Virus record (IMG/VR): IMGVR_UViG_3300002835_000007
Span: 62,001 to 126,000 of that record
Length of the DNA: 64,000 bases
Direction: 5' to 3' (one strand)
The position numbers and the translations under genes are program-made. Shown here piece after piece: positions 19,478 to 38,485 of this stretch. The stretch's first letter is position 1; each line of letters begins with the position of its first letter. The notes beneath the pieces were generated by a model. That model was not told the DNA's origin. It did no database searches and worked only from the letters and a program-made list of their open reading frames with translations.

Positions 19478-19510
19478 ATTTGCATAAGTGAAAACTTATG
19501 CTTATCTTTG
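19478..19510 (+). promoter_or_regulatory. promoter with hairpin-forming spacer (representative of a family in 19-39 kb)
   Basis: TTT-GCATAAG-tgaaaa-CTTATGC-TTATCTTTG; same sequence near 22609, 23870, 34067. Confidence 0.75.
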
Positions 19511-19532
19511 ATTAAACAAAACAATAAAAGTT

Positions 19533-19763
19533 ATGAAAGATTTATTTGAAACACCAGAGTTGATACCAAACGAAGTACAAGCAATATTGGAATCATTTGA
19601 TGAGGATAGTGGAAACACCTATTTTGAGTTAGATAGGATATTGAGTGAGATAGAACCATTGGGTTATACCTTTGATTACTATTTGGACGCAGAACCATAT
19701 GGGTTAAGACCTATGGGTATGGAATTGGAAGAGTTAGAGGGTTGGGAACATATTAATGATTAA
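19533..19763 (+). CDS. hypothetical acidic protein
   Basis: DLFETPELIP...GYTFDYYLDAEPY. Confidence 0.75.
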   Translation: MKDLFETPELIPNEVQAILESFDEDSGNTYFELDRILSEIEPLGYTFDYYLDAEPYGLRPMGMELEELEGWEHIND

Positions 19764-20025
19764 TGTTATGAAAATAGTTAAAAGTTGTTTACGTAGTACT
19801 GACGATATAAAATACGAGAGGGTATTAGAAACAAGTACACACATTTATTTTTATCCAATGGGCGACCACAAAGATAAAAAATTATTTGCTAAAAAACATA
19901 ATAGGGTTATGAATCTAATTGCCGAGGGTGATTATGTTGATAATGAGATAATGGAAATTTTTGCAAGTGGGAATTATAGTTGGGTAAGTAAGAAATTTGA
20001 AAATAAATTTGGAAAATTGAAATAG
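19756..20025 (+). CDS. hypothetical protein
   Basis: overlapping ORF. Confidence 0.65.
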   Translation: MINVMKIVKSCLRSTDDIKYERVLETSTHIYFYPMGDHKDKKLFAKKHNRVMNLIAEGDYVDNEIMEIFASGNYSWVSKKFENKFGKLK

Positions 20026-20063
20026 TTTATTTATCTTTGTTGAAACAATTAAAAACAAATATT

Positions 20064-20903
20064 ATGAGAAATGAATTTAACAATTTAGTAGAAACTTTAA
20101 AACGTTGGGACTTGTATCAAATAGGTGATGAAGTTGATATGGCGTTGACAGATTTGTCTGATAAGATAGCAGAAGTTGAAAAACGTATTGAATGTGTTAA
20201 ACGTACTAATGTTGATAGTCACGAGATACTATTTACTAATCAAGTTAAATTGGAAGAAAGTATTGGGTATGATAATGTAGAGATACTACAAAGAAGTGTT
20301 ACTGATATTAACATTGCATTAGATTTAACCATTAATGAACCAATAGAGTGTAATTGGTATGGTTTATTCGAAGAACCAAAAGAAGAAATAGAGGATAAAT
20401 TTAAACCTAGAAGTGTAGCAGAATATGTTGCAACATTACCCAAGGAAGAACCAAAGGTATTAATACCAAAAGATAGTATTGTTGAGTGGAAAGAAACAAG
20501 ACAATATTATAGTGTTAATGGTGGTGCTAAAGCGAGAGTAACCGAAGACTATACAACGGAACACGAAAGTAACGATAATTGTGTTAAAGTTGAATGGTTG
20601 GATGAAAAAGCAAATAACCAACAAAATGGTGGCTATTTTAGAGATATGTTTAAAGAAGACTTTGAGTTACCAAGTGTACCAACTTTTTTATGTTATTCAG
20701 ATGATAACCATAATATTGTAAAAGACATTATTGCGAAGTTAAAAGTAATTGATGTTGACGGAGAAACTATGCAGTATATCTTAAAGGAAGTTGGTATGGA
20801 AGACCAAATGTTAAGGCAACTAATAATGAGTAGTACTGAAAGTAATACAAAAGATTTGTTGGAAGAGAAACGAATTTTGAGTAACCAAGGTAAATTAGTT
20901 TAA
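20064..20903 (+). CDS. hypothetical protein
   Basis: start moved to ATG downstream of promoter. Confidence 0.75.
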   Translation: MRNEFNNLVETLKRWDLYQIGDEVDMALTDLSDKIAEVEKRIECVKRTNVDSHEILFTNQVKLEESIGYDNVEILQRSVTDINIALDLTINEPIECNWYGLFEEPKEEIEDKFKPRSVAEYVATLPKEEPKVLIPKDSIVEWKETRQYYSVNGGAKARVTEDYTTEHESNDNCVKVEWLDEKANNQQNGGYFRDMFKEDFELPSVPTFLCYSDDNHNIVKDIIAKLKVIDVDGETMQYILKEVGMEDQMLRQLIMSSTESNTKDLLEEKRILSNQGKLV

Positions 20904-20993
20904 AATAAAATTAAAAAGATTGGATGAATGTTATTGTTTATCCAATCTTTATTCTTATATTTGTTAAACAAACCAATTAAAACTTTAGAACCT

Positions 20994-21188
20994 ATGGATT
21001 ATAGTATGTATTTATTTAGCAACCTTATCAAATTTTATGACAAGGAATTTGCTGACGCTTGTTATGACGAGCAATGGGATGATTTGCCAAGTTTATATGA
21101 TGAGTATGACAAAAGCAAATTCAATGTTGACACCAAAGGTGAATACGAATGTATGGAAAATTTCTTAAAAGATAAGTACAACAAATAA
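20994..21188 (+). CDS. hypothetical protein
   Basis: start moved to ATG 20994. Confidence 0.65.
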   Translation: MDYSMYLFSNLIKFYDKEFADACYDEQWDDLPSLYDEYDKSKFNVDTKGEYECMENFLKDKYNK

Positions 21189-21264
21189 TTTAATAATAAT
21201 CCAATTTATATTTGGTAGATTGGATTATTATTCTTATATTTGTTAAACATTAAAAATAAAGATT

Positions 21265-21702
21265 ATGGGAAGTTTTAGTTGGAACAAAGCAGATGAATTA
21301 ACGAACACTGAAAATGTTGCTTATGGTACACCTTTTAAATTCTTAATACCAAAAGAATTTGGTGGTGGGTTTATCAAAGATTACTATCAAGATTATGGTG
21401 AACTAGGAACAAAAGAAATTAGTGGTGAACCTAAATACGATATGTATGAACTATTAGCATTTTGGAACAATGCAGAGGATTTGAAATTTGAGGGTGAATA
21501 TCCATTGATGAAACAAATTGATGAACATACTGATTACAATAGAAGTAAAGGTATTGACATTGGTTGTTACGATGAACAAATATTAAAACTTAAATACCCT
21601 TTAAAATTAGTTTCAGCTTCATTCAAAGGTACGTATGAAGATTTGGAGACTTGTAGTTTAGGTGACCCCGACCAAGGGTTTTTTCCAAGAAGAAGAAATT
21701 AA
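21265..21702 (+). CDS. conserved phage hypothetical protein
   Basis: MGSFSW...Y.DYG...D.YELLA.WN...DPDQG. Confidence 0.75.
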   Translation: MGSFSWNKADELTNTENVAYGTPFKFLIPKEFGGGFIKDYYQDYGELGTKEISGEPKYDMYELLAFWNNAEDLKFEGEYPLMKQIDEHTDYNRSKGIDIGCYDEQILKLKYPLKLVSASFKGTYEDLETCSLGDPDQGFFPRRRN

Positions 21703-21785
21703 AAATAATTTAAAAATAACCTATCAAATATTTGGTAGGTTATTTTATTTTTACTATATTTGTATTGTAATCAAAAACAAACATT

Positions 21786-22202
21786 ATGAAAACTAAAAGA
21801 GAATTAGCAGAAAAACAAATTGAGTTACAAAACAGAGTTAATGCAGTAGCAAGTATTAATATTGTAACGTGTGGAAATTGTGGTAGTGTATTATTACACG
21901 ATAGAATGGATTCTGAAATTGAATGTGCGTGTTGCAAGTCAGTAATGGATTTATCTGATTGTCCCGATTTATGGTATGAGGGTTGCCAAAATAATAGTGA
22001 GTTTGACGAAGAAGAAATCTTAACAAAACAAATTAGTGTTGAAGACGTTGTAAGGGTTGCTATGGATTTAAAAATGAATCCGAGTATTGCAGAGATTAAC
22101 GAAGTATTAAAATACTACGATAGTGAAGCAGAGGAAGACAAAACGGCAACGTGGGAATTGATTGTGGAGAACTTATTGTATAATTGTGTTGCACCAAAAT
22201 AA
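21786..22202 (+). CDS. zinc-ribbon protein
   Basis: VTCGNCG...ECACC. Confidence 0.7.
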   Translation: MKTKRELAEKQIELQNRVNAVASINIVTCGNCGSVLLHDRMDSEIECACCKSVMDLSDCPDLWYEGCQNNSEFDEEEILTKQISVEDVVRVAMDLKMNPSIAEINEVLKYYDSEAEEDKTATWELIVENLLYNCVAPK

Positions 22203-22283
22203 TTTAAAATAAAATAACAAAAGATTTGGATAATCGAAATATTATCCTTATCTTTGTTTCACAAACAAATTAAAACTAATATT

Positions 22284-22592
22284 ATGAATGACATCGCAAA
22301 ATTAAAAAGTTTAATATCTGAAGTTAAAGATATTGATAGACCAAAGTTTGACAGAGTATACAATGAAGTACTTTTTCCAAGAATGGTTAACGTGGCAGAA
22401 AAATGGAAAAAAAATGAATTGTCCATTGGTAGTTATCAAAATGATGATACACACAACAAAGTAGTTGGTGAATTATTTGATGATAGCAATCTACAAAGAT
22501 TGGTTGAAACCAAAATGAAACCTTACCTTGAAGAAAAAGGATTCAAAGTTGTTATTTGCAGTCCGAGTTATTATGTTTATATTCGTTGGTAA
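22284..22592 (+). CDS. hypothetical protein
   Basis: own promoter; start moved to 22284. Confidence 0.7.
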   Translation: MNDIAKLKSLISEVKDIDRPKFDRVYNEVLFPRMVNVAEKWKKNELSIGSYQNDDTHNKVVGELFDDSNLQRLVETKMKPYLEEKGFKVVICSPSYYVYIRW

Positions 22593-22667
22593 AATAAATT
22601 AAAAAAAGATTTGCATAAGTGAAAACTTATGCTTATCTTTGTTTCACAAACAAAAACAATAAGAGTT

Positions 22668-22931
22668 ATGGCAACAATGACAAAGACAGAATTTTTCGCA
22701 AAGTATGGTGGTGGATTGGTAGTGGCAGAAGAGGATAGTGTAGAATATGGTGACTATCTTTTTTTACACCCCGAAGAAATTGATAGGGTGAAAGAATTTG
22801 ATACGGAAGAGTATCAAGTTGTATCGGTACACGAAACCGAGGACGGAGAAGACATCGTTGATATGGGCGACATTGACTATGGTACACAACCATACAAATA
22901 TGGTTATTTTGTAATTGAAAAAGGAATTTAG
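22668..22931 (+). CDS. hypothetical acidic protein
   Basis: own promoter; start moved to 22668. Confidence 0.7.
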   Translation: MATMTKTEFFAKYGGGLVVAEEDSVEYGDYLFLHPEEIDRVKEFDTEEYQVVSVHETEDGEDIVDMGDIDYGTQPYKYGYFVIEKGI

Positions 22932-22934
22932 ATT

Positions 22935-23261
22935 ATGACACCAAGTGAAGTAAGAAACAAGTTAGAACTATTAGGGTTAATAGTGAATAACAAAGCAGTA
23001 TCTTTTACAAAGTTTAAGAGTATTGCAGACGCACACCAATATGGTAGCAGAGGGAATAAAATCTACATAGTATTTTATGGACACCCAAAAGAAAATATGT
23101 TTGCGTTTTATCCCCCACAAACGACTAAAAAAGAGTCTATGGATATAGCATACCAATATTATCTTACAATGGTTGAGAACGCAGATATAAACGAATTTAC
23201 CTATGGTAACGTTTGTTGGACTGATAGGGGTTATCCATTAAACTATCGCAAAGTGGGGTGA
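22935..23261 (+). CDS. hypothetical protein
   Basis: followed by terminator at about 23250-23273. Confidence 0.7.
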   Translation: MTPSEVRNKLELLGLIVNNKAVSFTKFKSIADAHQYGSRGNKIYIVFYGHPKENMFAFYPPQTTKKESMDIAYQYYLTMVENADINEFTYGNVCWTDRGYPLNYRKVG

Positions 23262-23292
23262 CCCACTTTTTTTGTGCGTGTAAAAAAATAAA

Positions 23293-23343
23293 AGGCACGT
23301 TGGAGTCTACTCTTCCATTCCCACGGCACGTCTAACTTGACAA
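23293..23343 (-). ncRNA. dispersed sRNA-like element copy 4
   Basis: CCGU-GGGA-AUGG + core; promoter CTTG-N20-AATCTTTG. Confidence 0.6.
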
Positions 23344-23475
23344 TACAAAGATTGCAATAATAATTGACATATGCAAGTAAAATAGCAAAAAAAATAATTT
23401 TATTTTTTTTTAATAAAAGTGTTGTGGGAATGGAAATAATTACTATCTTTGTAGAGAACAATTAAACAAACGATT

Positions 23476-23853
23476 ATGAAACGAATTAAAGTTAGATTCA
23501 ATTTAGGTAGAGGTAAGAACTTTATGAAATGGAAAGTTCAATACCCTAATGGTGAAGTTGAATATTATGACCCTACAAGCACTCAATTGGTGATGGTGAA
23601 TTGTCAGTTAGGCAACCATAAGAAAGTCGCTGAAAAGATTTATAATGGGGGTGAAAAAGTTGTGTGTGCGTGGGTATTGTGTGAATCAATTGTGATTAAC
23701 ACAAATAAGTTTTTACAACTTGATACCTATTGTCATAGAATTAAATACAATCCAAGGGTGCAACCAAATTGGTTGTTAAATGGTGAAGTAGTGGATAATC
23801 AAAAGTATGAACAAATTGGTAGTGTTGATTTTGGTTTATATAAAATAATATAA
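23476..23853 (+). CDS. conserved phage hypothetical protein
   Basis: KVRFNLGRGKNFMKW...K.VCAWV...YNPR. Confidence 0.75.
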   Translation: MKRIKVRFNLGRGKNFMKWKVQYPNGEVEYYDPTSTQLVMVNCQLGNHKKVAEKIYNGGEKVVCAWVLCESIVINTNKFLQLDTYCHRIKYNPRVQPNWLLNGEVVDNQKYEQIGSVDFGLYKII

Positions 23854-23924
23854 AACATTTTTAAAAAAGATTTGCATAAGTGAAAACTTATGCTTATCTT
23901 TGATAAACATTAAAACAAAACATT

Positions 23925-24137
23925 ATGAGTGAAGAAAAAGTTTATTTAGGACAAATTGAAAAAGGGTTAACAAAAGTAAAAGTATATTACAATCCGAATG
24001 GTTACGTAATTGACATTTACTTTAATGGTAGAATCCAAGCAGAGTGTGAGTTATTAGATGACGACCACGTATGGAGAGAATTGAAAGAAAGAGGTTTTAA
24101 AAAATCTTTTATAAAAGTTATAATTTCTATGTTATAA
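23925..24137 (+). CDS. hypothetical protein
   Basis: own promoter. Confidence 0.65.
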   Translation: MSEEKVYLGQIEKGLTKVKVYYNPNGYVIDIYFNGRIQAECELLDDDHVWRELKERGFKKSFIKVIISML

Positions 24138-24200
24138 ATTTGGAATTAACAAAAATAGTAATTATATTTGTAGTGTATTAATCAATAAAAATAAATAGTT

Positions 24201-25040
24201 ATGCCAAACTGGATTACAAACAACGTAAGAATCATTGCTGATGAAACTTTATTAGCAAAGATTAGAGAAGAAGTAAAAGGAACACCATATAGTAATGGTG
24301 AAGACAAAGAATTTGATTTTAATCAAATTGCACCAATACCAACTGAATTGGTAGGTACAACAAGTCCTTGTCGCATTATTACACAAGAGGAATACGATAT
24401 ACAAGAGGAACGTATTACCAAAGGTGAATTAACGGAAAGTGAAGTACGTTTTGGAGTATCGAGAGGTATTACAAAAGAAATGCACGATGATTTTATTGAA
24501 CGATTTGGTTATGCTGATTGGTATGGGTGGCAAATTAGTAATTGGGGTACAAAGTGGAACGCAAGTGATGTGTATTGGAGTGATGATAATGAGAGTGTAA
24601 GTTTTAATACTGCGTGGAGTACACCTTTCAACTTATTTTTAAAACTATCTGAAAAATATCCCGAAGCACGTATTGAAGTTGAATATGCTGATGAAGACTT
24701 TGGTTACAATGTAGGAACTTATACTTTGGTAGGTGGAGTTGAAATTGAAGAAAATGTACCCGAAGGTGGCACACGTGAAGCATACGAAATGGCTCTTAAT
24801 ATTCAAGGTGGTGAAGACTATTATTTAGGTGATGATTTTTGTGATGTAGATGAAGACGAGGAATTATCAAAGTTTACAAATTCAATGATTGAAATTGCAT
24901 ACGATAGAGATTATATGCCAACCGAGGATTGTGGCTATGCAAGGAATGTGTTGGAACGATTTAAAGAGATTGCGTTGGCAAATGAAAACTTTGAGTTGGT
25001 TGCAACAATACAAAAGGAATTAGAAAAAGTAGAAAAATAA
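24201..25040 (+). CDS. DUF1281/YubB ferredoxin-like domain protein
   Basis: MPNW, FDFN.I.P.P, WY.W...NWGTKWN, F.TAWS.P. Confidence 0.75.
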   Translation: MPNWITNNVRIIADETLLAKIREEVKGTPYSNGEDKEFDFNQIAPIPTELVGTTSPCRIITQEEYDIQEERITKGELTESEVRFGVSRGITKEMHDDFIERFGYADWYGWQISNWGTKWNASDVYWSDDNESVSFNTAWSTPFNLFLKLSEKYPEARIEVEYADEDFGYNVGTYTLVGGVEIEENVPEGGTREAYEMALNIQGGEDYYLGDDFCDVDEDEELSKFTNSMIEIAYDRDYMPTEDCGYARNVLERFKEIALANENFELVATIQKELEKVEK

Positions 25041-25118
25041 TTTAAAATAATGGCACTATCATTTGGTAGTGTCATTTCTTTTTACTATCTTTGTTATAAC
25101 AAATAAAACATAGAACTT

Positions 25119-25358
25119 ATGACAAACGGAGATTTAAACTTTGACATTGATAAAATCAAATGGAATCAAGAATCAATTGAGAATGATATAACTAAAATGG
25201 CTATATCAAAAGAAGAGGATTTTAATTTAGATTTTCCTTATCTTATTGATGTGGAAGATACAAGTTACTCTTATGCTACGGAAGAAGAACGAGATAATGA
25301 CTATGAAGAATTGTGTAAAATTTTAACAAAAAATACTCAAAAATATTTTTATAATTGA
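25119..25358 (+). CDS. hypothetical protein
   Basis: own promoter. Confidence 0.65.
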   Translation: MTNGDLNFDIDKIKWNQESIENDITKMAISKEEDFNLDFPYLIDVEDTSYSYATEEERDNDYEELCKILTKNTQKYFYN

Positions 25359-25399
25359 AATATTATACTTATCTTTGTTAAAACAAAACAATAGAACTT

Positions 25400-25648
25400 A
25401 TGAGCAAGCCAAGATTTTTTCAAGCAGTATTAAAAGAAGTAAAAGGAAATGTGTTAGACCACGTTTACCCTTATTTGAAAGGTGCAGACCAATTAACATT
25501 AGAAGAACGTATGGGTAGTTTTAACGCTAATTGTCCAGAGTGTGATTGTAATAGTTGGATTTTATTACCAAAAGAAAGTGTAGCAGTTACACAAGGTGGG
25601 AAACCATATTGTGAGTGTATGAATTGTGGGTTAATGACGCACCTATAA
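25400..25648 (+). CDS. zinc-ribbon protein
   Basis: CPEC...CMNC. Confidence 0.7.
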   Translation: MSKPRFFQAVLKEVKGNVLDHVYPYLKGADQLTLEERMGSFNANCPECDCNSWILLPKESVAVTQGGKPYCECMNCGLMTHL

Positions 25649-25728
25649 AATTATTAAAATAATCCAATTTATATTTGGTAGATTGGATTATTATTCTTAT
25701 CTTTGTTAAAACAATAAAATAAAACAAT

Positions 25729-26241
25729 ATGAAAATCGAATTGAAAAACTTAAAAGTTAATGTAGCGTTTAGTGAAGAAACAACTTGTTTTATTGCTGAC
25801 GTATTTGTAAACGGAAAGAAAGTTGCACACGCTAAAAATGACGGACGTGGTGGTTGCACCGACTATTATCCTTATGAGGGGCAAAGAGAGTTGTTAAAAC
25901 AAGCAGAATTATTTTGCAAAGGGTTACCAAAACGAGAATTTACCTTTGGAGATAAAACACACGAGTTTGACCAAACATTAGAAAGCGTTATTGATGATTT
26001 AGTATTTGCCAAAGAAAAAGAAAAAGAGCAAAAAAAGATTGATAAATTATGTGAAAACCATATTGTTTGGGGTAAACCTAACGGATATAGTTATAAACAA
26101 ATTTCATTCAAGGGCAATCCTAAATTTGCAGAGATTAAAAAATCTATTACGGGACAAAAATCGTTGGAAAGATTAATTGACCGAGTAAAAGGGGAATTGA
26201 AAGTTGGGGAAATTATTTTCAATAAAAATTTGGAATTGTAA
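25729..26241 (+). CDS. conserved phage hypothetical protein
   Basis: SEETTCF.A...NG...NDGRGG. Confidence 0.75.
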   Translation: MKIELKNLKVNVAFSEETTCFIADVFVNGKKVAHAKNDGRGGCTDYYPYEGQRELLKQAELFCKGLPKREFTFGDKTHEFDQTLESVIDDLVFAKEKEKEQKKIDKLCENHIVWGKPNGYSYKQISFKGNPKFAEIKKSITGQKSLERLIDRVKGELKVGEIIFNKNLEL

Positions 26242-26288
26242 TTTCTAATTATTATCTTTGATATTATAAATCAATTAAAACAAATATT

Positions 26289-26582
26289 ATGAACGTAGAA
26301 GAAGCAAAAGCAGTATTGAAAGCAAATGGTTACTTTGTAGATAACCTTTGGCACGTGGAAGACGTTAAGTCTAAATTCAATTGTGATGATGATGAAGCAC
26401 AATACATTTTGGAGCAGTCTTTGACCAATGAAGCAACAATGGAGCAGATTTGGTTTAGTATTGATGAATTTGGAGAAATGGAAAATTTAAAACAAGTAAA
26501 TGACGATGAAGAAGACCGAAAATTTGTTGATGAAAATTTGGAAGAGTTTAAAAAAATTGCAGAGCAATTAAAAAAGAAATAA
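26289..26582 (+). CDS. hypothetical protein
   Basis: own promoter. Confidence 0.7.
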   Translation: MNVEEAKAVLKANGYFVDNLWHVEDVKSKFNCDDDEAQYILEQSLTNEATMEQIWFSIDEFGEMENLKQVNDDEEDRKFVDENLEEFKKIAEQLKKK

Positions 26583-26656
26583 AAATATATCCCATATTAT
26601 TTGGTAGTATGGGATATTATTCTTATCTTTGTATTATAAATAAAACAACAAACATT

Positions 26657-31216: not shown

Positions 31217-31344
31217 TACCTTGTACAGAAATCTGTACTCGTGTGGTGTATGGGGGTGTGTGGTGTGTGTTGGGGTGATGAAAAAAAAGTTTAAAAAAAG
31301 TTTAAGAATTATTTGGAAGTTTAAAAAATAATTCATACATTTGT

Positions 31345-31635
31345 AATAAGAAAGAAAGTTTTTGGTAGGTATATGGTGTAGTGGATTAAGTTTCCGAGCA
31401 TAACCAAAAAAACATATATATAGTGAATAGTCTAACTATTAACTTATCGCAGATTGGGGAGTAATTACCTTGGTTGCCAATGAGTATGCGAGTGTGCTAT
31501 CTTGGGTGGGATAGCACCACTATATTATAAAGTATTATCGGTTGTGTGTTGTACCTTAAACACTCTCTTGTTTGTTTGTTGTTTATAGTTATGGCGTGAC
31601 TATTCATATGAGTAGTCACACCCATAATTATTCAA
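31345..31635 (+). ncRNA. candidate structured ncRNA
   Basis: promoter at about 31312-31343, no credible ORF, several nested stems. Confidence 0.45.
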
Positions 31636-31711
31636 GGGACAAAAGTAATCATTATTTTTCACATAACAAAATAATTTTGTTATTTATATTCATTCTAAAT
31701 AATTTCATAAC

Positions 31712-31770
31712 GTTCGCATATGGGCGTGACGGAGTCTACTCTTCTACTCTTGTAGCACGTCCACCGACAA
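31712..31770 (-). ncRNA. dispersed sRNA-like element copy 6
   Basis: CUAC-AAGA-GUAG + core; promoter CTTG-N20-AATCTTTG. Confidence 0.6.
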
Positions 31771-31869
31771 TACAAAGATTGTAATAATATTTTTAAAAAA
31801 CAAGTAAAATAAATTTTTTTATTTAAAAAGTTTTTCTTATATTTGCAAAACAATCTAAATTAACAAGCA

Positions 31870-32337
31870 ATGAAGTATAAATTCAAAGAAGTATTAGTAT
31901 CAAGTTTAATTGTCTTTGGTTGCGTTTATTTATTGAAGACAACTACTATTACTACACACTATACGAAAGTGGCTACAATCAAGCCAAAAGCACCTAAAAA
32001 GAAAAAAGTTAAACATACCAAAGTAATGGTAACTATGTATAACGCAGTTGAAGGACAATGTGATAGTGACCCATACACGACAGCAAGTATGTTAAAAATT
32101 AATCCATTTAAAGCAAGTGAACAAAAGTTTATAGCAATGAGCAGAGATTTATTAAAACGTTGGGGTGGTAAGTTTGACTATAAGCAAAAAGTTAAATTGG
32201 TTGGTTGTGGTGATAAAGACGGAATTTATATTGTTGCCGATTGTATGAACGAAAGATTTACAAATAAAATAGACATACTTGAAACGATTGGCACACCTTT
32301 GTATAAATTTAAAAGTGCAAAAATATTTCCATTATAA
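31870..32337 (+). CDS. 3D-domain (Asp-Asp-Asp) cell-wall protein with N-terminal anchor
   Basis: VTMYNAVEGQCDSDPYTTAS, IAMSRDL, VADCM...KIDIL. Confidence 0.75.
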   Translation: MKYKFKEVLVSSLIVFGCVYLLKTTTITTHYTKVATIKPKAPKKKKVKHTKVMVTMYNAVEGQCDSDPYTTASMLKINPFKASEQKFIAMSRDLLKRWGGKFDYKQKVKLVGCGDKDGIYIVADCMNERFTNKIDILETIGTPLYKFKSAKIFPL

Positions 32338-32393
32338 TTTGGAATTGTCAAATGTAAGTATTATCTTTGTTAAAACAAATTAAATAAAACACA

Positions 32394-32669
32394 ATGGCAA
32401 ATTTTAAACCACAAGTAACGTATATGACAAGTGAAAGTCTACACGATTACAGAGTAGAAAGATATGGTGTAAGAACTGAATACACAACAAAGAAATTCAA
32501 TACTTATACTGAATTAAAGAAAGCATTAAAAGATTATATTTTGGATAATCATATTGGTGAAGACCCAGTTTTTGTTTCACGTAGCAGACGTGGTGAATGG
32601 GGAGAATGGTTTGAGAAGTGGGAAAAAATTAATGGTAAACCTAAAATAACTAAACAAGGGTGGCAGTAG
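32394..32669 (+). CDS. hypothetical protein
   Basis: VSRSRRGEWGEWFE.W. Confidence 0.7.
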   Translation: MANFKPQVTYMTSESLHDYRVERYGVRTEYTTKKFNTYTELKKALKDYILDNHIGEDPVFVSRSRRGEWGEWFEKWEKINGKPKITKQGWQ

Positions 32670-32690
32670 TGTCACCTTTTTTTTATGGTT

Positions 32691-32761
32691 GGTTGCCGTT
32701 CACGTATAGACGTGTCGGAGTCTACTCTTCTACTCTCGCAGCACGTACCTTAATTGTACAA
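32691..32761 (-). ncRNA. dispersed sRNA-like element copy 7
   Basis: CUGC-GAGA-GUAG + core + CACGU-CUAU-ACGUG. Confidence 0.65.
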
Positions 32762-32898
32762 TACAAAGATTGCAATAATATTTGACATATGCAAGCAAAA
32801 AGTGAAAATAATTTTATTTTTATTTTATTACAAAATAGTTGCAGAATTAAAAATAATGTTTATCTTTGTAGGGTATTAATCAATTAAAATAAAACACA

Positions 32899-33558
32899 AT
32901 GGAAAAGTTTGAACAATTAACAAGTTTACAACAAGGTTTAGTAAATAGTTTAATTAGTGAGTTTACAAGGATAAACCCTAAACCAACTAATGGGACATCA
33001 CGTTTTAGTTTTGATACTATTAATGAGTGTCTAAAAGAAGAAGACAGATTCAAAGAAACTATTGCGAAACACAATCTTACAATGATGAAAGTTTTTGTGA
33101 CGCAATTTAAGAGTGACATTAAAGAGTTTGAAAAAGAATTTGGTAAAGTGGTAAATGTTGAGTTGGGGTATAGATACCCTAATAGTGAGCAAGACCAACA
33201 CACGTTGGATAAAATGTTGGAACGAACAAAAGAACAACCATTGGGTGAACATAAAGGTTGGGAAACCCAATTATTTTTTGTCAGCAAAACAAAAAAATAT
33301 AGTAGTGGTGATAGTCGCTTTGATTATTTTAACAACAAACAATACCACAAAATCTATGTTGATTTTAAACGTGAAATTGTTAAAGTAACACTTGAAAGTG
33401 GTAAAGTAGTGCAAGCATACAAAATTGTTGGTTTGACTTATAATACCAACGAATGGTTACATAGAGATAAAGAAAATTGTAAAACATTTATGACATTGGA
33501 CGAATTGATACAAAGTCATAAACCTACACAACAAAAACTTGTTGAGTTGGCACAATAA
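32899..33558 (+). CDS. hypothetical protein
   Basis: 219 aa; promoter shares about 43 identical bp with that of gene 18933. Confidence 0.75.
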   Translation: MEKFEQLTSLQQGLVNSLISEFTRINPKPTNGTSRFSFDTINECLKEEDRFKETIAKHNLTMMKVFVTQFKSDIKEFEKEFGKVVNVELGYRYPNSEQDQHTLDKMLERTKEQPLGEHKGWETQLFFVSKTKKYSSGDSRFDYFNNKQYHKIYVDFKREIVKVTLESGKVVQAYKIVGLTYNTNEWLHRDKENCKTFMTLDELIQSHKPTQQKLVELAQ

Positions 33559-33634
33559 AAATAATTACAAAAGATTTGGAATATTGAAAAGTATTCCTTA
33601 TCTTTGTTATATACTAATTAAAACAATATAAGTT

Positions 33635-33844
33635 ATGAAAATAGAAGTTTATACAATAGATTATCATGGACACGAAGAAAAGTGTATTATTGCTGATAAC
33701 TTTACGGGAAATGGTGGTGGAGATTGGCACTTGGTAACACTTGGTGGGAATAATGAAACCATATTTAATTGTAATACTTGGAATGAAATGCAAAAATTTA
33801 TTGTTAAGTTTAAAGGTGTTAAAAAAGAAGTAAAAATAAATTAA
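33635..33844 (+). CDS. hypothetical protein
   Basis: own promoter. Confidence 0.65.
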   Translation: MKIEVYTIDYHGHEEKCIIADNFTGNGGGDWHLVTLGGNNETIFNCNTWNEMQKFIVKFKGVKKEVKIN

Positions 33845-33917
33845 AAATAATCATTAAAAGATTAGGAATATTGAAATGTATTCCTTATCTTTGTTTCACA
33901 CTAAACAACTAGAAACT

Positions 33918-34079
33918 ATGGAAAAGGAAATTAAAAAAGTATGGGAAGAATTGATTAGTCTTTATGACATCGCAGACCAATTAGAAGACAATGGACAAGA
34001 CGCAGAAGAAGTTAGAATAAAACTAAATAATATTACTGATTTTTTTGTAAAAAACTTTGAAAAAGATTTGCATAAGTGA
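33918..34079 (+). CDS. hypothetical protein
   Basis: start moved to 33918. Confidence 0.6.
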   Translation: MEKEIKKVWEELISLYDIADQLEDNGQDAEEVRIKLNNITDFFVKNFEKDLHK

Positions 34080-34126
34080 AAACTTATGCTTATCTTTGTT
34101 TTATAAATCAATTAAAATAAAATAGT

Positions 34127-34342
34127 ATGGTAAAAGTTTATGTACAAATAACAGCATTTGATAAGAATAGTGCTGATAACATTGGTAGAAGTATTGTTGC
34201 TGATAACAAAGAAAGTTTTAACGAACAAGTTGAGGAATTTGAAAATGAAATACCTTTTACAAAGTTTTATGTTGAAATGGTTGCTGATGATGTTTTAACT
34301 GATGAACAATTAGAAATTGTTGAAGACCACGATGTAAATTAA
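34127..34342 (+). CDS. hypothetical protein
   Basis: own promoter. Confidence 0.65.
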   Translation: MVKVYVQITAFDKNSADNIGRSIVADNKESFNEQVEEFENEIPFTKFYVEMVADDVLTDEQLEIVEDHDVN

Positions 34343-34372
34343 TTTAAAAATATATCCTAAAAACAAAACATT

Positions 34373-34501
34373 ATGAGAACTTTATTTGTATCAACTGAAA
34401 CTTTTACTGATATGTTAGATGGGTTTATCAAATCGGGAGTAACCTTTGAGTCAGAAGAAAAGAATGGAGGTATATTAATTACTTTTACGGGAGGTTATTA
34501 A
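34373..34501 (+). CDS. hypothetical protein (42 aa, not in ORF track)
   Basis: MRTLF...GVTF...ITFTGGY; typical leader; followed by terminator. Confidence 0.55.
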   Translation: MRTLFVSTETFTDMLDGFIKSGVTFESEEKNGGILITFTGGY

Positions 34502-34532
34502 AAATTAAAGGGTATTACACCCTTTTTTTATT

Positions 34533-34606
34533 GGTTGCCGTTGTTCACGTATGGACGTGTTGGAGTCTACTCTTCTACTCTCGTAGCACGTCTGAATCAT
34601 TGACAT
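34533..34606 (-). ncRNA. dispersed sRNA-like element copy 8
   Basis: GACGUG-[CUAC-GAGA-GUAG]-AAGAGUAGACUCCAA-CACGUC. Confidence 0.65.
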
Positions 34607-34738
34607 AACAAATATCGGAATTATAAATCAATTATGCAAGAAAAAAGTAAAAATAATTTTATTTTTATTTTATATAAAATGTTGCACAATTAAAAAAGAA
34701 TGTTTATATTTGTACTATAATCATTAAAACAAAACATT

Positions 34739-35083
34739 ATGAGCAAGACATCAATTAGCAAAAAGTATTTAGAAGTGTTACCAAACGACAAAAACATTAC
34801 ACACTTAAAAGTTGAATTATACTATGATTTAGGTGGTATGAACTATTTTAGTGGTAGTGTTGAGGGTAGAGGTATAAAACTTTCAGTTAGCCCAGTACAA
34901 CGTAACAAAAATGAAGGTGGGGTTGTATGGGAAAGTTACACAGCATTTAGTGGGTTTAAAAAACTTGTAAAAGAAATGACAAGGTTTAATCAAAAAACTT
35001 GTAATACCTTTATTTTATCTGAAACGGAAGAAGAAGAAATCGTTAAAGTAGTATTGAATCATAATTGGTTAAAATTAAAATAA
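34739..35083 (+). CDS. conserved phage hypothetical protein
   Basis: LKVELYYDLGGMNYFSG..E.RG..LSVSPV. Confidence 0.75.
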   Translation: MSKTSISKKYLEVLPNDKNITHLKVELYYDLGGMNYFSGSVEGRGIKLSVSPVQRNKNEGGVVWESYTAFSGFKKLVKEMTRFNQKTCNTFILSETEEEEIVKVVLNHNWLKLK

Positions 35084-35158
35084 AAAAAGTTAAAAAAGGT
35101 TTGCATAATCAAAAGATTATGCTTATCTTTGTTTCATAATCATTAAAACATACACAAG

Positions 35159-35353
35159 ATGAAAATTTCGCAGTACAATTGGAGTTGGTGGTTCGTTTCC
35201 ACTTTGATAGTTATCCTTATCGGATTAATGGTAGGAATGGGTGGCAGAACACAAACCGAAGAGTTGGTTGCCAATACTATGATGATAGTTGGTATGGTAT
35301 CGTTTATCCCTTGCTTATATGTAGGGTGTAAACCAACACAAGAAAAAAATTAA
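35159..35353 (+). CDS. small two-TM membrane protein
   Basis: two hydrophobic helices; own promoter. Confidence 0.65.
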   Translation: MKISQYNWSWWFVSTLIVILIGLMVGMGGRTQTEELVANTMMIVGMVSFIPCLYVGCKPTQEKN

Positions 35354-35431
35354 AAAAAGTTAAAAAAGGTTTGGAATTGTAAAAACAATTCCTTACCTTT
35401 GATAAAAGAAATCAATTAAAAAACAAACATT

Positions 35432-35659
35432 ATGAAAAAAGAATTATTTATTTTGGCAGTATTAGGTATAGTAGGTCAAATTGTTTCACTAGTAGGTATA
35501 TTTTTCTATTCAGAAACCAATGACGCATTAATGATAAACTTATGGAGTTTTCTAACCTTTGGGTGTTTATCGGCTGTTGTGTTGTTTGTAGACAAGAAAC
35601 AAACTGAAAACAAGATGAAAGAAGAATTTAAAGATATAGAAGAATTAGAAGAAAATTAA
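35432..35659 (+). CDS. small two-TM membrane protein
   Basis: two hydrophobic helices; own promoter. Confidence 0.65.
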   Translation: MKKELFILAVLGIVGQIVSLVGIFFYSETNDALMINLWSFLTFGCLSAVVLFVDKKQTENKMKEEFKDIEELEEN

Positions 35660-35870
35660 AATATAGTAGGAAAGGGTTTATATGAGAGGAAAATACTCTG
35701 CTGAACCTCGTAGACTTGGTAACGATACATCATTGCATAATTAGTTCCCCTTTCCGTATTGTTTATCACTAATTATGCTTTGACAAACCTTTCATATTGT
35801 AAATGACTTAGAGGAATGTTTCGTTAGAGGTGTTGTTGGGAATAGGGTTTACCTATTCCCAATTCCTATT
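35660..35870 (+). ncRNA. candidate pseudoknotted ncRNA
   Basis: three 8-10 bp long-range helices plus terminal hairpin; no ORF. Confidence 0.4.
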
Positions 35871-35899
35871 TATACAACTTTGTTTTTTCATTTTTATTT

Positions 35900-35964
35900 T
35901 GTTCACGTATGGACGTGTTGGAGTCTACTCTTCTACTCTCGCAGCACGTACCTTAATCGTACAT
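35900..35964 (-). ncRNA. dispersed sRNA-like element copy 9
   Basis: CUGC-GAGA-GUAG + core; promoter GTTG...TATCTTTG. Confidence 0.65.
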
Positions 35965-36100
35965 AACAAAGATAGTAATAATATTGACTTGTGCAACAAA
36001 AAAAGTAAAAAAAAATAATTTATTTATTTTTCACAATATAGTAGGAAATTAAAAAAGAATGTTTATCTTTGTAAGGTATTAATCAATAAAACAAATTACA

Positions 36101-36721
36101 ATGGGTTACACAACTGATTTTAGTGGTAGATTTGAACTTAACAAGGAGTTAAGTCCAAAGATGGAACAATACTTAAAATTGTTCAACGAAACACGCAGAA
36201 TGGAAAGAAACACTGATGAAGTGTTTGGAGTACAAGGTGAGTTTTACGTATTTGGTGGTGGAAGTTTTGGACAAGACCACGAAGACAATGTAGTAGATTT
36301 TAATGAGCCACCAAGCACTCAACCAAGTCTTTGGAATCAATGGACACCTAGCGATGACCGAATGGGTATTGAGTGGGATTGTGGTGAGAAGTTTTATAAC
36401 TATACTGAATGGTTAGTTTATCTTATTCACAAAATTCTAGCACCGAATGGTTATGTCCTTAATGGAGTGGTAGAATATAGTGGTGAGGAAGTTGGTGATG
36501 TTGGTGAAATAGTTGTTGTTGATAATAGAGTATTTGTCAGAGAGAAATACCAAGATGGCGACAATGGGGAAAGTACACCACAAAACGCACAAAAGTTTGG
36601 CAGAGTTAATGGCAACTATGTTTATATCAAAGACTTTATGAGAACTGATGTAGTGTTGATTTTAGATGGTACTGATAACGAATTACCTAATGGGGTTGTA
36701 AAGTTATTAGAAAATAACTAA
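36101..36721 (+). CDS. conserved phage hypothetical protein
   Basis: MGYTTDFSGRF, QPSLWNQW, EKFY.Y.EWL.YLI, GY.LNG. Confidence 0.8.
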   Translation: MGYTTDFSGRFELNKELSPKMEQYLKLFNETRRMERNTDEVFGVQGEFYVFGGGSFGQDHEDNVVDFNEPPSTQPSLWNQWTPSDDRMGIEWDCGEKFYNYTEWLVYLIHKILAPNGYVLNGVVEYSGEEVGDVGEIVVVDNRVFVREKYQDGDNGESTPQNAQKFGRVNGNYVYIKDFMRTDVVLILDGTDNELPNGVVKLLENN

Positions 36722-37177
36722 AACATTTTAAAAAAAGATTTGGATAATCGAAAGATTATCCTTATCTTTGTTTCACAAACAAATTAAAACAAAAAGTTAT
36801 GTTAGGCAAAATCGTTTATTTAGGAATCTTATTAGGAGGATTAGCAGTAATCAAATTAGTGTGTAATTATTTAGATAAAAGAAATGAAATTTAAAGAAAT
36901 AACCTTAACCCAGCACGAAATGCAACAAGCATTAAAGAGTAGTGTTCACAAGTCTAAAAAAGCGTTTCAACGCAAAGATAAACATAAAAAGAATTATATT
37001 AACAAGTTAATGCAAGAGGATTATGTATGATAAAGAAATAATGTTGATTGAAATCTATTATGGGGTTTCAATCAACGCAAAAAACTAAATTGTGTTTGTT
37101 TAGTGTTTTGATTATAACGAGGAAGTGGTTGCCGAATGGTTGCCACTTTTTTTATGCAGTAACGCACACACGAAACA

Positions 37178-37230
37178 TATACACGCAACGGAGTCTACTC
37201 TTCTACTCTCGTAGCACGTCTTACTGACAT
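37178..37230 (-). ncRNA. dispersed sRNA-like element copy 10
   Basis: CUAC-GAGA-GUAG + core; promoter GTTG...TATCTTTG. Confidence 0.6.
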
Positions 37231-37367
37231 AACAAAGATAGAAATAATTTTGATATATCCAACACAAAAATGAAAATAATTTAAAAAAAATTAAATGCTA
37301 ATTATAGTATGTTGTGGCAACAAGATTCAATGCTTATATTTGTAGTATAACTTTAAAACAATATATT

Positions 37368-37607
37368 ATGGAATGCACATTAGAAAATTTAGAGAGAGTA
37401 TTTAAAATCATTATTGAGCAACACGCAGACAATAATGAACACGCAGAATTTGACGATGAAAGTGATTTAGTTGATGTAGTCAAAAGAGTAGTTGAATGGT
37501 TGGATGAAGAACCTACATTTTGTTGTCAAAATTGTGGTGGTGGGTTTACACGTGATGAAATGGTATTTGGTGATGATGTAGATTTATGTAAAGATTGTGC
37601 AAAATAA
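37368..37607 (+). CDS. zinc-ribbon protein
   Basis: CQNC...CKDC; start moved to 37368. Confidence 0.65.
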   Translation: MECTLENLERVFKIIIEQHADNNEHAEFDDESDLVDVVKRVVEWLDEEPTFCCQNCGGGFTRDEMVFGDDVDLCKDCAK

Positions 37608-37667
37608 ATTTGCATAATCAAAACATTATGCTTATCTTTGTTAAACAAACAATTTAAAACTTATATT

Positions 37668-37991
37668 ATGTCAAGCAAAAACTTAAACAAAGATTTAGAA
37701 CAATTAGAAAAACAAGTTTACCACTACTTTAATGAGTTGTTGGAGAAACAAGAAGAAATAGTAATCTTTGATGAATGTGATTTAGAACACGACACACCCG
37801 ATGATTACCTTGAAATGCGTAATGATATTACGGGAAACGTGTTTGATGTCCACCCACTAAAAGTAACCCAAAATGGAATACTTGTAGTTGAAGCAGACGG
37901 AAGTTTTGTAAGACACTTGATTAAGTTGCAAGATTTATCAAGCACACAAGACAAAATTACCCTAATAGAATTAATGGAAAATAGTTTGTAA
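37668..37991 (+). CDS. hypothetical protein, tandem paralog 1
   Basis: VIFDE.DLE.DTPD.YLE.R...TGNVFDVHPLKV shared with next gene. Confidence 0.75.
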   Translation: MSSKNLNKDLEQLEKQVYHYFNELLEKQEEIVIFDECDLEHDTPDDYLEMRNDITGNVFDVHPLKVTQNGILVVEADGSFVRHLIKLQDLSSTQDKITLIELMENSL

Positions 37992-38069
37992 AAAACTATA
38001 AAAAGATTTGGATAAGTGAAAACTTATCCATATCTTTGTTGTATAAATAAACAATTAAAATAAACTAAA

Positions 38070-38423
38070 ATGAGAATAAGTGCTTTAAAAAGAGATATAG
38101 ATGTTTTAAAAACACATATCCAAATGACATTCGAGGAAATGTTATATCAACAAAAAGAATTTGTTATCTTTGATGAAAAAGATTTAGAAAATGACACACC
38201 CGATAATTACCTAGAAATTAGAGATAAAGAAACGGGCAACGTATTTGATGTACACCCACTAAAAGTTCTTAAAGTTGGTAATTACTACGATATTGAAGTA
38301 GTAACGGCAGACGGAAAATTTACAAAACATTCAATTAAAATGTGGGATTTATCAATAGAGGATAGAATTAATTTAATTGAATTAATGGACAAATGTTTGG
38401 TAGATAATGATAACGAAATATAA
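38070..38423 (+). CDS. hypothetical protein, tandem paralog 2
   Basis: same motif as 37668-37991. Confidence 0.75.
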   Translation: MRISALKRDIDVLKTHIQMTFEEMLYQQKEFVIFDEKDLENDTPDNYLEIRDKETGNVFDVHPLKVLKVGNYYDIEVVTADGKFTKHSIKMWDLSIEDRINLIELMDKCLVDNDNEI

Positions 38424-38485
38424 ACAAATAAACTTGCATAAGTCAAAACTATTCACTATCTTTACGGAAACAAATAATTAATACT

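What the first reader, a model, noticed from the sequence alone, without database searches (positions are those of the whole stretch)
19478..38465. Promoters whose -33/-7 spacer is itself a covarying hairpin (fused terminator-promoter cassettes)
Seen: many single-gene promoters read TTT-[stem-loop]-TTATCTTTG with compensatory changes. Examples: GCATAAG-tgaaaa-CTTATGC (~19481, 22612, 23873, 34070), GGATAAG-tgaaaa-CTTATCC (~28669, 38010), GGATAATC-GAAA-GATTATCC (~36742), GCATAATC-AAAA-GATTATGC (~35103), GGAATTGT-AAAA-ACAATTCC (~35373), GGAATATT-GAAA-AGTATTCC (~33578). The U-rich -7 box follows the stem directly, so the same ~32 bp could terminate the upstream transcript and start the next. Established analogy: promoter/stem-loop PeSL cassettes that shuffle genes in variable regions of T4-type phages. 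Alternatives are an RNA processing/stability hairpin or a cruciform used for shut-off.
Basis: partly seen in the sequence, partly recalled or inferred. Interest (0 to 1): 0.65.

Follow-up and report, generated by a model that had tools for sequence, protein, structure and literature searches.

The report
Terminator hairpins nested inside phage promoters
In a giant T4-type phage of Bacteroidota from lake water, many small genes are separated by a ~40-base cassette in which a hairpin, conserved in shape but not in sequence, exactly fills the gap between the two promoter boxes. One short element therefore probably ends one transcript, starts the next and acts as a joint for shuffling genes.

Summary
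In window 19.4-38.1 kb, 13-14 single-gene promoters of the Bacteroidota type (-33 TTTG / -7 TAnnTTTG) carry an 8-bp stem plus 4-nt loop (mostly GAAA). It runs from the G of the -33 box to 2 nt before the -7 box. Five of the eight stem positions show compensated double changes.

The pairing beats column shuffles and slid registers in the window. It does so again in 99 distinct spacers from other viral contigs chosen only by their flanks. Bacterial promoters with the same flanks rarely have it.

G·U mismatches outnumber A·C. The hairpin sits about 19-20 nt after the preceding stop codon. It has an A-tract before it and a T-rich tail after it. It shares its geometry with this genome's GC-rich terminators, and a generic terminator scan flags it.

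The phage has a T4-type capsid and portal. Relatives carry the same small genes in permuted order with cassettes at the joins.

Best reading: a PeSL-like composite terminator/promoter cassette, adapted to Bacteroidota promoters, with the stem-loop nested inside the promoter rather than upstream of it. Termination itself is inferred, because no RNA data were available.

The parts
19472..19510 (+). H-type cassette: A-tract, -33 TTTG, 8-bp/GAAA hairpin 19482-19501, -7 box 19503-19510
   Evidence: (dG -13.9, z -5.8)
22218..22256 (+). H-type cassette, 7-bp stem with 6-nt loop (hairpin 22228-22247)
22603..22641 (+). H-type cassette, identical 39-mer to 19472-19510 (hairpin 22613-22632)
23864..23902 (+). 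H-type cassette, identical 39-mer (hairpin 23874-23893)
25339..25377 (+). Degenerate H-type cassette (6 A-T pairs, -33 is TTTT; dG -1.4)
28659..28697 (+). H-type cassette with C-G to G-C swap at stem pair 2 (hairpin 28669-28688)
33568..33606 (+). H-type cassette, different stem with one U·G wobble (hairpin 33578-33597)
33855..33893 (+). H-type cassette, 7 pairs, -33 reads TTAG (hairpin 33865-33884)
34060..34098 (+). H-type cassette, identical 39-mer (hairpin 34070-34089); the upstream ORF's TGA lies in the loop
35093..35131 (+). H-type cassette, AAAA loop, outer helix AGGT/ATCT with G·U (hairpin 35103-35122)
35363..35401 (+). H-type cassette, AAAA loop, -7 box TACCTTTG with a matching AGGT upstream (hairpin 35373-35392)
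36732..36770 (+). H-type cassette (hairpin 36742-36761)
37602..37640 (+). H-type cassette, 7 pairs, no outer helix (hairpin 37612-37631)
38000..38038 (+). H-type cassette (hairpin 38010-38029)
20915..20963 (+). L-type cassette: long hairpin whose loop holds the -33 TTG, T-rich spacer, -7 box
21192..21242 (+). L-type cassette: hairpin loop holds -33 TTTGG
21713..21762 (+). L-type cassette
25049..25093 (+). L-type cassette, stem with a G·U wobble
25658..25705 (+). L-type cassette
26587..26631 (+). L-type cassette
28274..28321 (+). L-type cassette
38881..38928 (+). L-type cassette
30022..30082 (+). GC-rich terminator whose T-run runs into the -33 box of the next promoter
18900..39300 (+). Array of about 50 co-directional small ORFs, mostly of unknown function, each with its own promoter (hyperplastic region)

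Best explanation
The element is a composite terminator/promoter cassette of a T4-type phage that infects a member of the Bacteroidota. It is the counterpart of the PeSL cassettes of T4-like coliphages.

About 40 bp carry, in order: an A-rich tract; the -33 box TTTG; an 8-bp stem with a GNRA-type tetraloop that fills positions -33 to -14 exactly; and the T-rich -7 box TAnnTTTG.

As DNA, the boxes recruit host RNA polymerase with sigmaA. Transcription starts about 5 nt after the final G, so the hairpin is not part of the cassette's own transcript.

As RNA made from the upstream gene, the hairpin folds about 19-20 nt after that gene's stop codon. It is followed by UUAUCUUUG(U)UU. The A-tract can pair with this U-tract, giving about -12 to -17 kcal/mol. 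The hairpin then acts as an intrinsic terminator, ending the upstream transcript on top of the next promoter.

Each small gene thus becomes an insulated, portable unit. The conserved flanks, identical over up to 39 nt, serve as patches of homology through which genes are gained, lost and permuted.

Shown: the anatomy, the covariation, phage specificity, terminator-like geometry, T4-type identity, and permuted gene order in relatives. Inferred: promoter activity, termination, and recombination at the cassette.
For: Covariation in the window: 65.1% of cells paired against 51.8% in shuffles (0/500); covariation score 0.387 against 0.10-0.17 for slid registers.

Covariation in 99 distinct spacers from other IMG/VR contigs chosen only by flanks: 70.6% against 58.1% (0/500), score 0.394 against 0.204, and 7 of 8 pairs with double changes.

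Phage specificity: 37% of viral spacers have at least 7 of 8 pairs (null 7.6%), against 9% of bacterial ones (Fisher 4e-7). Several of the 10 bacterial positives lie on short MAG contigs that hold several cassettes.

RNA-level hints: non-Watson-Crick pairs are G·T/T·G 32 against A·C/C·A 7, and 11 against 1 in stems with a single defect. The loop is GAAA in 24 of 36 hairpin spacers, against 26 of 294 non-hairpin spacers.

Folding: z-scores of -4.6 to -6.4 for nine cassettes. The inner hairpin is -4.6 to -9.2 kcal/mol and the extended fold -12 to -17.4 in 12 of the 14 cassettes.

Terminator likeness: a generic scan flags them, 37 sites against 5.6 +/- 3.0 expected. The genome's GC-rich terminators have the same 8-bp plus tetraloop plus T-run build.

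Other overlaps of a terminator with a promoter exist. The -33 box can lie in the hairpin loop (8 in the window, many elsewhere), or the T-run can serve as the -33 box (30022-30082).

Position: the upstream stop codon is 18-20 nt before the hairpin in 10 of 14 cassettes. In other contigs, 40 of 52 hairpin cassettes lie 14-25 nt from the stop, against 12 of 36 non-hairpin ones (p = 6e-5).

Promoter identity and TSS position come from PMC6847099 and the Bacteroidota-dominated hits.

T4-type identity: Gp23 at E = 1.5e-62 and portal at 2.5e-73. Three cassette-bearing relatives carry Gp23 at E of about 1e-63, and two more match it more weakly.

Shuffling: gene order is permuted in relatives L063, L080, L117 and L011. 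At the L063 junction, two genes that are 6 kb apart in the window are joined by one cassette with a different, fully compensated stem. One metagenome contig skips three cassette-flanked genes.
Against: There are no RNA data of any kind: all 24 runs that hold the phage are DNA.

The stems are AT-rich and short, and the U-tract is interrupted (UUAUCUUUG), so termination may be weak or partial.

In two cassettes (25339-25377 and 34060-34098) the upstream ORF seems to end inside the hairpin.

Covariation of the outer helix is inconclusive: one compensated case, one G·U case, and one family of four with an A·C mismatch.

The G·U excess could partly reflect composition, because the 5' arm is G/A-rich and the 3' arm T-rich. 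The sequences are also not independent.

Many read laying joints have short sides (24-62 nt). They may only show that one cassette copy matches another.

The complete relative G001 has at most 7 such hairpins (3 with a full 8-pair stem) among 85 promoters, so the hairpin is dispensable.
Confidence: 0.66

Rival explanations
1. The hairpin is an RNA 3'-end stability or processing element. Transcription reads through several genes, and the hairpin only protects or defines the 3' ends of processed mRNAs; it does not release the polymerase.
For: The RNA-level signals are the same as for termination: covariation, G·U tolerance, a GNRA loop, and position after the stop codon. The weak stems and interrupted U-tract argue for poor termination.
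Against: The A-tract/T-tract symmetry and the match to the genome's own canonical terminators are specific to terminators. Every gene has its own promoter, so polycistronic read-through is not needed.
Confidence: 0.13
2. The feature acts at the DNA level. The palindrome is a recombination or cleavage target, for example a small cruciform recognised by a junction-resolving enzyme, or it is kept perfect by template switching during replication. Transcription would be incidental.
For: The PeSL authors speculated that the stem-loop might be bound by a recombination protein (PMC2839356). Cassettes sit at gene-order breakpoints. Quasi-palindrome correction could produce two-sided changes without selection on RNA.
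Against: G·T mismatches greatly outnumber A·C, and a cruciform needs both strands to pair. Arms of 8 bp are very short for extrusion. The conserved GNRA loop, the fixed distance from stop codons and the T-rich tail are not explained.
Confidence: 0.08
3. The palindrome is an operator for a dimeric phage or host regulator that sits between the -33 and -7 boxes and shuts the promoters off or turns them on.
For: Dyad symmetry between promoter elements is the classic place for operators. The feature is phage-specific.
Against: More than 25 different stems keep only their complementarity, and one protein could not read them all. G·U-type defects are tolerated but A·C ones are not. The loop, not the arms, is the conserved part.
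Confidence: 0.05
4. A single-stranded DNA hairpin is part of promoter recognition, as in the early promoters of phage N4, and is read by a phage-modified polymerase or a phage sigma factor.
For: The phage encodes 2-3 ORFs with a Sigma70_r2 domain. G·T pairs are also tolerated in DNA hairpins, and GAAA loops stabilise them.
Against: No phage RNA polymerase was found in the 206 kb held. The flanks alone are a full host promoter, and many neighbouring promoters lack the hairpin. The -33 to -14 region is not melted in open complexes (general knowledge).
Confidence: 0.04
5. It is a chance by-product of AT-rich spacers and of shared ancestry among duplicated cassettes.
For: Spacers are AT-rich with an A-rich centre. 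Four copies are identical and so are not independent.
Against: No shuffle of 500 reaches the observed pairing or covariation in two independent sets, and slid registers fail as well. The distribution is bimodal. Bacterial spacers with the same flanks rarely pair.
Confidence: 0.02

Closest known systems
PeSL (promoter-early stem-loop) cassettes of T4-like myoviruses (Arbiol et al. 2010, PMC2839356; Comeau et al. 2014, PMC4122927)
   Same: Both are short intergenic cassettes combining a strong host-type promoter, an AT-rich tract and a stem-loop terminator. Both are clustered in hyperplastic regions of small ORFans of T4-type phages, flank single genes, and sit at insertion, deletion and permutation breakpoints between relatives.
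   Different: The promoter is the Bacteroidota -33/-7 type, not sigma-70. No Shine-Dalgarno sequence is present. The stem-loop is nested inside the promoter (from -33 to -14), or its loop carries the -33 box, instead of lying just upstream. Stems are AT-rich with a GNRA loop rather than G-run/C-run. Terminator activity, promoter activity and mini-circles are untested here.
Canonical intrinsic (Rho-independent) terminators with paired A-tract and U-tract
   Same: A stem with a tetraloop (GNRA), a T-rich tail and an upstream A-tract complementary to the tail. It lies just after a stop codon and scores as terminator-like on both strands.
   Different: The stem has only 2-3 G-C pairs. The U-tract is interrupted because it must also spell the -7 box. 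The element doubles as a promoter.
Bacteroidota sigmaA promoters (-33 TTTG / -7 TAnnTTTG)
   Same: The boxes, the 20-nt spacing, the distance to the start codon and the lack of a Shine-Dalgarno sequence all fit.
   Different: Host promoters with identical flanks almost never have a self-complementary spacer.
Hairpin early promoters of phage N4
   Same: A small hairpin lies within a promoter.
   Different: N4 hairpins are read as single-stranded DNA by a virion RNA polymerase. Here the flanks are a complete host promoter and no phage polymerase was found.
MerR-type operators in promoter spacers
   Same: Dyad symmetry lies between the two promoter elements, with a long spacer.
   Different: Here the arms vary freely in sequence and only complementarity is kept. 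The 20-nt spacing is the normal one for this promoter type.

Membership tests
PeSL cassettes of T4-like phages | Carried by a T4-type myovirus | tested here: met
   Gp23 major capsid PF07068 at E = 1.5e-62 and T4 portal PF07230 at E = 2.5e-73 in the same record. Three cassette-bearing relatives carry Gp23 at E of about 1e-63, and two more match it more weakly.
PeSL cassettes of T4-like phages | Repeated intergenic motif clustered in a hyperplastic region of small, mostly unknown ORFs | tested here: met
   About 50 co-directional ORFs lie in 18.9-39.3 kb, nearly all without family hits. Cassettes lie between them. In the complete relative G001, 46 of 85 such promoters lie in 10-40 kb.
PeSL cassettes of T4-like phages | Near-consensus host-type (early) promoter in the cassette | tested here: met
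   By sequence only: TTTG, 20 nt, then TAnnTTTG, with the start codon 23-32 nt after the box. Consensus from PMC6847099. Activity and timing were not tested.
PeSL cassettes of T4-like phages | Stem-loop located just upstream of the promoter's -35 element | tested here: not met
   In the 14 H-type cassettes the stem-loop occupies the spacer. In 8 L-type cassettes its loop holds the -33 box. Only a few (such as 30022-30082) have it upstream.
PeSL cassettes of T4-like phages | Stem-loop is an effective transcription terminator (reporter assay) | not testable with these tools
   Only sequence criteria are available. No RNA runs hold the phage.
PeSL cassettes of T4-like phages | Indels and gene exchanges between relatives have their breakpoints at the cassettes | tested here: met
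   Gene order is permuted in L063, L080, L117 and L011. The L063 junction is shown. One contig in run X21 skips three genes. Because cassettes fill the intergenic space, breakpoints cannot be placed more finely.
PeSL cassettes of T4-like phages | Mini-circles formed by recombination between neighbouring cassettes | not testable with these tools
   This needs inverse PCR or raw long reads. The runs available were contigs only.
Intrinsic terminator | Stable stem-loop directly followed by a U-rich tract, downstream of a stop codon on the coding strand | tested here: met
   inner hairpin -4.6 to -9.2 kcal/mol, 9 of the 12 nt after the stem are T in six of the 14 cassettes (7-8 in the others), and the stop codon lies 18-20 nt upstream in 10 of 14.
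Intrinsic terminator | RNA 3' ends at the U-tract | not testable with these tools
   No RNA run holds the phage.
Bacteroidota sigmaA promoter | -7 TAnnTTTG (no G at the nn positions) and -33 TTTG at the canonical spacing, upstream of a leader without a Shine-Dalgarno sequence | tested here: met
   The flank pattern hits mostly Bacteroidota genomes.
Operator of a dimeric DNA-binding protein | Conserved half-site sequence | tested here: not met
   At least 25 different stems occur among spacers with 8 of 8 pairs. 7 of 8 pairs change on both sides.

The most novel reading that the evidence does not exclude
Nesting the terminator inside the promoter is not just compaction. It couples the two events. 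Polymerase that terminates at the hairpin is released, or stays bound, on the -7 box of the same cassette and re-initiates there without leaving the DNA. A train of cassettes would then work as a stop-and-restart relay that resets every transcript at each gene and keeps polymerase on the phage's early region. The same design would make each gene a self-contained mobile unit across a whole clade of giant T4-type phages of Bacteroidota.
Probability: 0.12. Interest if true: 0.75.

Novelty: new variant of a known kind. Interest (0 to 1): 0.56.

Why it matters
PeSL cassettes have been described only in T4-like phages of Proteobacteria, with sigma-70 promoters. This finding extends them to giant T4-type phages of Bacteroidota in lakes.

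It also shows a more extreme design. A terminator stem-loop is fitted base for base into the spacer of a promoter, so about 40 bp are read twice: as DNA by sigma factor and as RNA by the elongating polymerase.

It gives:
- a compact natural terminator-plus-promoter part for Bacteroidota genetics;
- a clear case of selection on RNA shape inside a promoter;
- a handle on how hyperplastic regions of large phages shuffle single genes.

The element is frequent in IMG/VR contigs, so it could help annotate transcription units and hyperplastic regions in uncultured Bacteroidota phages.

Tried and rejected
- **Phage collection, megablast:** window 19-39 kb gave nothing.
- **Phage collection, short blast with one cassette:** gave only a weak hit in the huge uncultured phage LR745206, whose 40-kb neighbourhood has a few partial hairpin spacers.
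- **Nearest cultured relative:** by capsid this is Flavobacterium phage immuto, 41% identity over part of the protein. It has no array of such promoters, 3 matches against 4 in the control, so it gives no experimental handle.
- **RNA evidence:** none of the 24 runs that hold the phage is RNA.
- **Read laying on four DNA runs:** joints fall at cassettes, but most have sides of only 24-62 nt and may simply be one cassette copy matching another. Only the X21 contig that skips three genes is counted as evidence.
- **Outer helix covariation** (AAAGAT with ATCTTT): inconclusive.
- **G·U versus A·C in the L-type hairpins:** 10 against 5, not decisive.
- **Rfam:** no family in the window.
- **Conserved ~100-nt intergenic repeat:** no convincing consensus fold.
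- **Sigma-70 promoter scan:** no enrichment, 100 against 115 expected.
- **Rules of the session:** No other genetic code was used.

Full report
**What the window is**

The window is bases 62,001-126,000 of a 205,931-bp IMG/VR virus record. The record has 30% G+C and CheckV rates it 58% complete. It occurs in many lake and freshwater metagenomes from 2016 to 2025, all of them DNA runs.

The record encodes a T4-type major capsid protein (PF07068, E = 1.5e-62) and a T4-type portal (PF07230, E = 2.5e-73). It also has two or three ORFs with a Sigma70_r2 domain. No RNA polymerase beta subunit or T7-like polymerase was found in the part held.

The nearest cultured capsids are those of Flavobacterium phage immuto and Rhodothermus phage RM378. 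Relatives that share the cassette are giant T4-type phages of 288-327 kb.

Window 18.9-39.3 kb is an array of about 50 small co-directional ORFs, almost all without family hits.

**The promoter**

The TTATCTTTG box is the Bacteroidota -7 element TAnnTTTG, and the TTTG 20 nt upstream is the -33 element. Of 85 candidates genome-wide, 65 have exactly 20 nt between TTG and TA. The start codon follows 23-32 nt after the box, with no Shine-Dalgarno sequence.

In Flavobacterium johnsoniae the final G of the box is at -5 (PMC6847099). The start site therefore lies about 5 nt after the box. The same flank pattern scanned over 185,579 species genomes returns mostly Bacteroidota. Sigma-70 type promoters are not enriched.

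**The observation**

Of 51 candidate boxes in the region, 11 have 8 of 8 mirrored pairs in one fixed register, 3 have 7, one has 6, and the rest have 5 or fewer.

The hairpin is an 8-bp stem with a 4-nt loop, mostly GAAA and sometimes AAAA. It begins with the G of the -33 box and ends one base before the T that precedes the -7 box. That places it at -33 to -14.

Ten different sequences occur. Pairs 2, 4, 5, 6 and 7 show two-sided compensated changes, and the C-G to G-C swap at pair 2 occurs in two different stem backgrounds.

On an unselected alignment of 37 promoters, pairing and covariation exceed all 500 column shuffles and all six slid registers.

**Beyond the window**

A scan of IMG/VR with only the flanks fixed (9 nt, then 19 free positions, then 9 nt) gave 183 sites and about 100 distinct spacers. 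Of these, 26 have 8 of 8 pairs and 13 have 7 of 8, with very diverse stems.

On the 99 distinct sequences from other records:
- 70.6% of cells pair, against 58.1 +/- 1.3 in shuffles (0/500);
- the covariation score is 0.394, against 0.204 in shuffles and 0.12-0.20 for slid registers;
- 7 of 8 pairs change on both sides.

The same flank pattern in bacterial genomes gives 9% hairpin spacers, against 37% in viral contigs (Fisher 4e-7). Several of the 10 bacterial positives lie on short MAG contigs that hold several cassettes, or on contigs of only 1.6-2 kb, and are probably phage. The hairpin is therefore a phage addition, not a property of the promoter type.

**RNA or DNA**

In stems with at least 6 Watson-Crick pairs, the defects are G·T or T·G 32 times and A·C or C·A 7 times. 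In stems with a single defect the count is 11 against 1. This is the asymmetry expected if the + strand folds on its own.

The loop is GAAA in 24 of 36 hairpin spacers, but in only 26 of 294 non-hairpin ones.

Composition bias and relatedness weaken these counts. They support an RNA-level function but do not prove it.

**Terminator likeness**

Folded as RNA, nine cassettes have z-scores of -4.6 to -6.4. The fold extends outwards: the A-rich tract just before the -33 box pairs with the T-rich part of the -7 box across a small internal loop. This gives -12 to -17.4 kcal/mol in 12 of the 14 cassettes. This is the A-tract/U-tract symmetry of strong and bidirectional terminators.

A generic terminator scan finds 37 sites in 20 kb, against 5.6 +/- 3.0 expected. 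It lists the strong H-type hairpins on both strands.

The genome's undoubted GC-rich terminators have the same build: 8 bp, a GNRA-type loop, two bases, then a T-run.

The stop codon of the preceding ORF lies 18-20 nt before the hairpin in 10 of 14 cassettes. In other contigs, 40 of 52 hairpin cassettes lie 14-25 nt after a stop codon, against 12 of 36 non-hairpin cassettes (p = 6e-5).

Neighbouring promoters without a spacer hairpin mostly have a terminator overlapping them in another register. In eight cassettes the hairpin loop carries the -33 box and the T-rich spacer is the tail. In others the T-run of an upstream terminator runs into the -33 box. The common denominator of all three layouts is a stem-loop followed by a T-rich run.

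**Gene shuffling**

Relatives share the window's small genes at 40-86% amino-acid identity, but in permuted order and always on the same strand. Cassettes are 85-94% identical where the genes themselves are 65-75% identical or unrelated.

In L063, the homologue of gene 22284-22592 is joined to the homologue of gene 28722-28997 by one cassette. Its stem differs from both window copies at several pairs yet is perfectly complementary.

One contig of run X21 joins the homologue of ORF 32899-33558 to that of ORF 34373-34501 through a cassette, skipping three cassette-flanked genes. The other joints in that table have short sides and may be cross-matches between copies.

Four window cassettes are identical over 39 nt.

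**Comparison with what is known**

PeSLs are small cassettes of a sigma-70 early promoter, an AT-rich tract and a stem-loop just upstream of the promoter. They lie in the hyperplastic regions of T4-like phages. They have been shown to terminate and to promote in reporter assays, and to recombine into mini-circles (PMC2839356, PMC4122927).

The present element shares the phage type, the location, the composition and the association with shuffling. It differs in three ways: the promoter type, the AT-rich stem with a GNRA loop, and the nesting of the stem-loop inside the promoter. I therefore rate it a new variant of a known kind. The positional feature of the PeSL definition is not met, and the functional features could not be tested.

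**Limits**

No RNA data exist for this phage in the runs on offer. Promoter timing (early or not) is unknown, and the host is inferred only from promoter type and relatives. Covariation of the outer helix is inconclusive. The complete relative G001 has at most 7 such hairpins, 3 of them with a full 8-pair stem, among 85 promoters, so the hairpin is an optional refinement.

Noticed in passing
window 17520-17620, 23305-23400, 31715-31800, 32700-32800, 34545-34645, 35905-36000, 37190-37280 (+); 40650-40760 and about 39936-40096 (-): A conserved intergenic repeat of about 100 nt, in at least 9 copies with a nearly invariant core of about 40 nt. It lies between a GC-rich terminator and a third, hairpin-less promoter type. 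It has no Rfam match and no convincing consensus fold. Its function is unknown.
   Followed up: partly
window 20915-20963, 21192-21242, 21713-21762, 25049-25093, 25658-25705, 26587-26631, 28274-28321, 38881-38928: A second way of fusing terminator and promoter. A hairpin of 9-16 bp flanked by A- and T-tracts carries the -33 TTTGG in its loop, and the T-rich tail serves as the promoter spacer. This layout is also common in other viral contigs (53 distinct examples).
   Followed up: partly
G000 2,000-80,000 versus window 18,900-39,000; sigma-like ORFs at G000 53,020, 34,937 and 148,936: Two spatially separate flavours of the -7 box occur: TACATTTG upstream of the region and TATCTTTG within it. 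The phage also encodes 2-3 proteins with a Sigma70_r2 domain. Whether the flavours mark temporal classes or different sigma factors is open.
   Followed up: no
window 7459-12364, minus strand: Four adjacent paralogous ORFs of 479, 331, 331 and 479 aa. The pairs are 40% and 45% identical. All four share a nearly identical N-terminus of about 20 residues. None has a Pfam or PHROG match.
   Followed up: partly
window 34077-34079 (also 25356-25358): The stop codon of the upstream ORF lies inside the cassette hairpin (a TGA in the loop at 34077-34079). A terminating ribosome would cover the 5' arm there.
   Followed up: no
window 21706-21719, 28265-28278, 22200-22213, 21186-21199, 33837-33850, 34340-34353: An A/T motif just upstream of many cassettes contains TAA in all three reading frames. 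It gives 12 matches against 4.0 +/- 2.1 expected. It would stop any ORF recombined in upstream of the cassette.
   Followed up: partly
window 29027-29059 and 29318-29350: Two adjacent genes (29060-29287 and 29351-30013) have identical -7 boxes and identical 25-nt leaders. Their spacers form a weaker hairpin shifted by one base and containing a G·U pair.
   Followed up: no
window 39401-39420: A perfect 8-bp hairpin with T-runs on both strands lies at the point where the + strand array meets minus-strand genes. It is probably a bidirectional terminator.
   Followed up: no
L072 (IMGVR_UViG_3300044530_001678): A 47.8-kb contig from another sample is 100% identical to window 33402-41000 over 7.6 kb. 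The same phage was therefore assembled independently.
   Followed up: no
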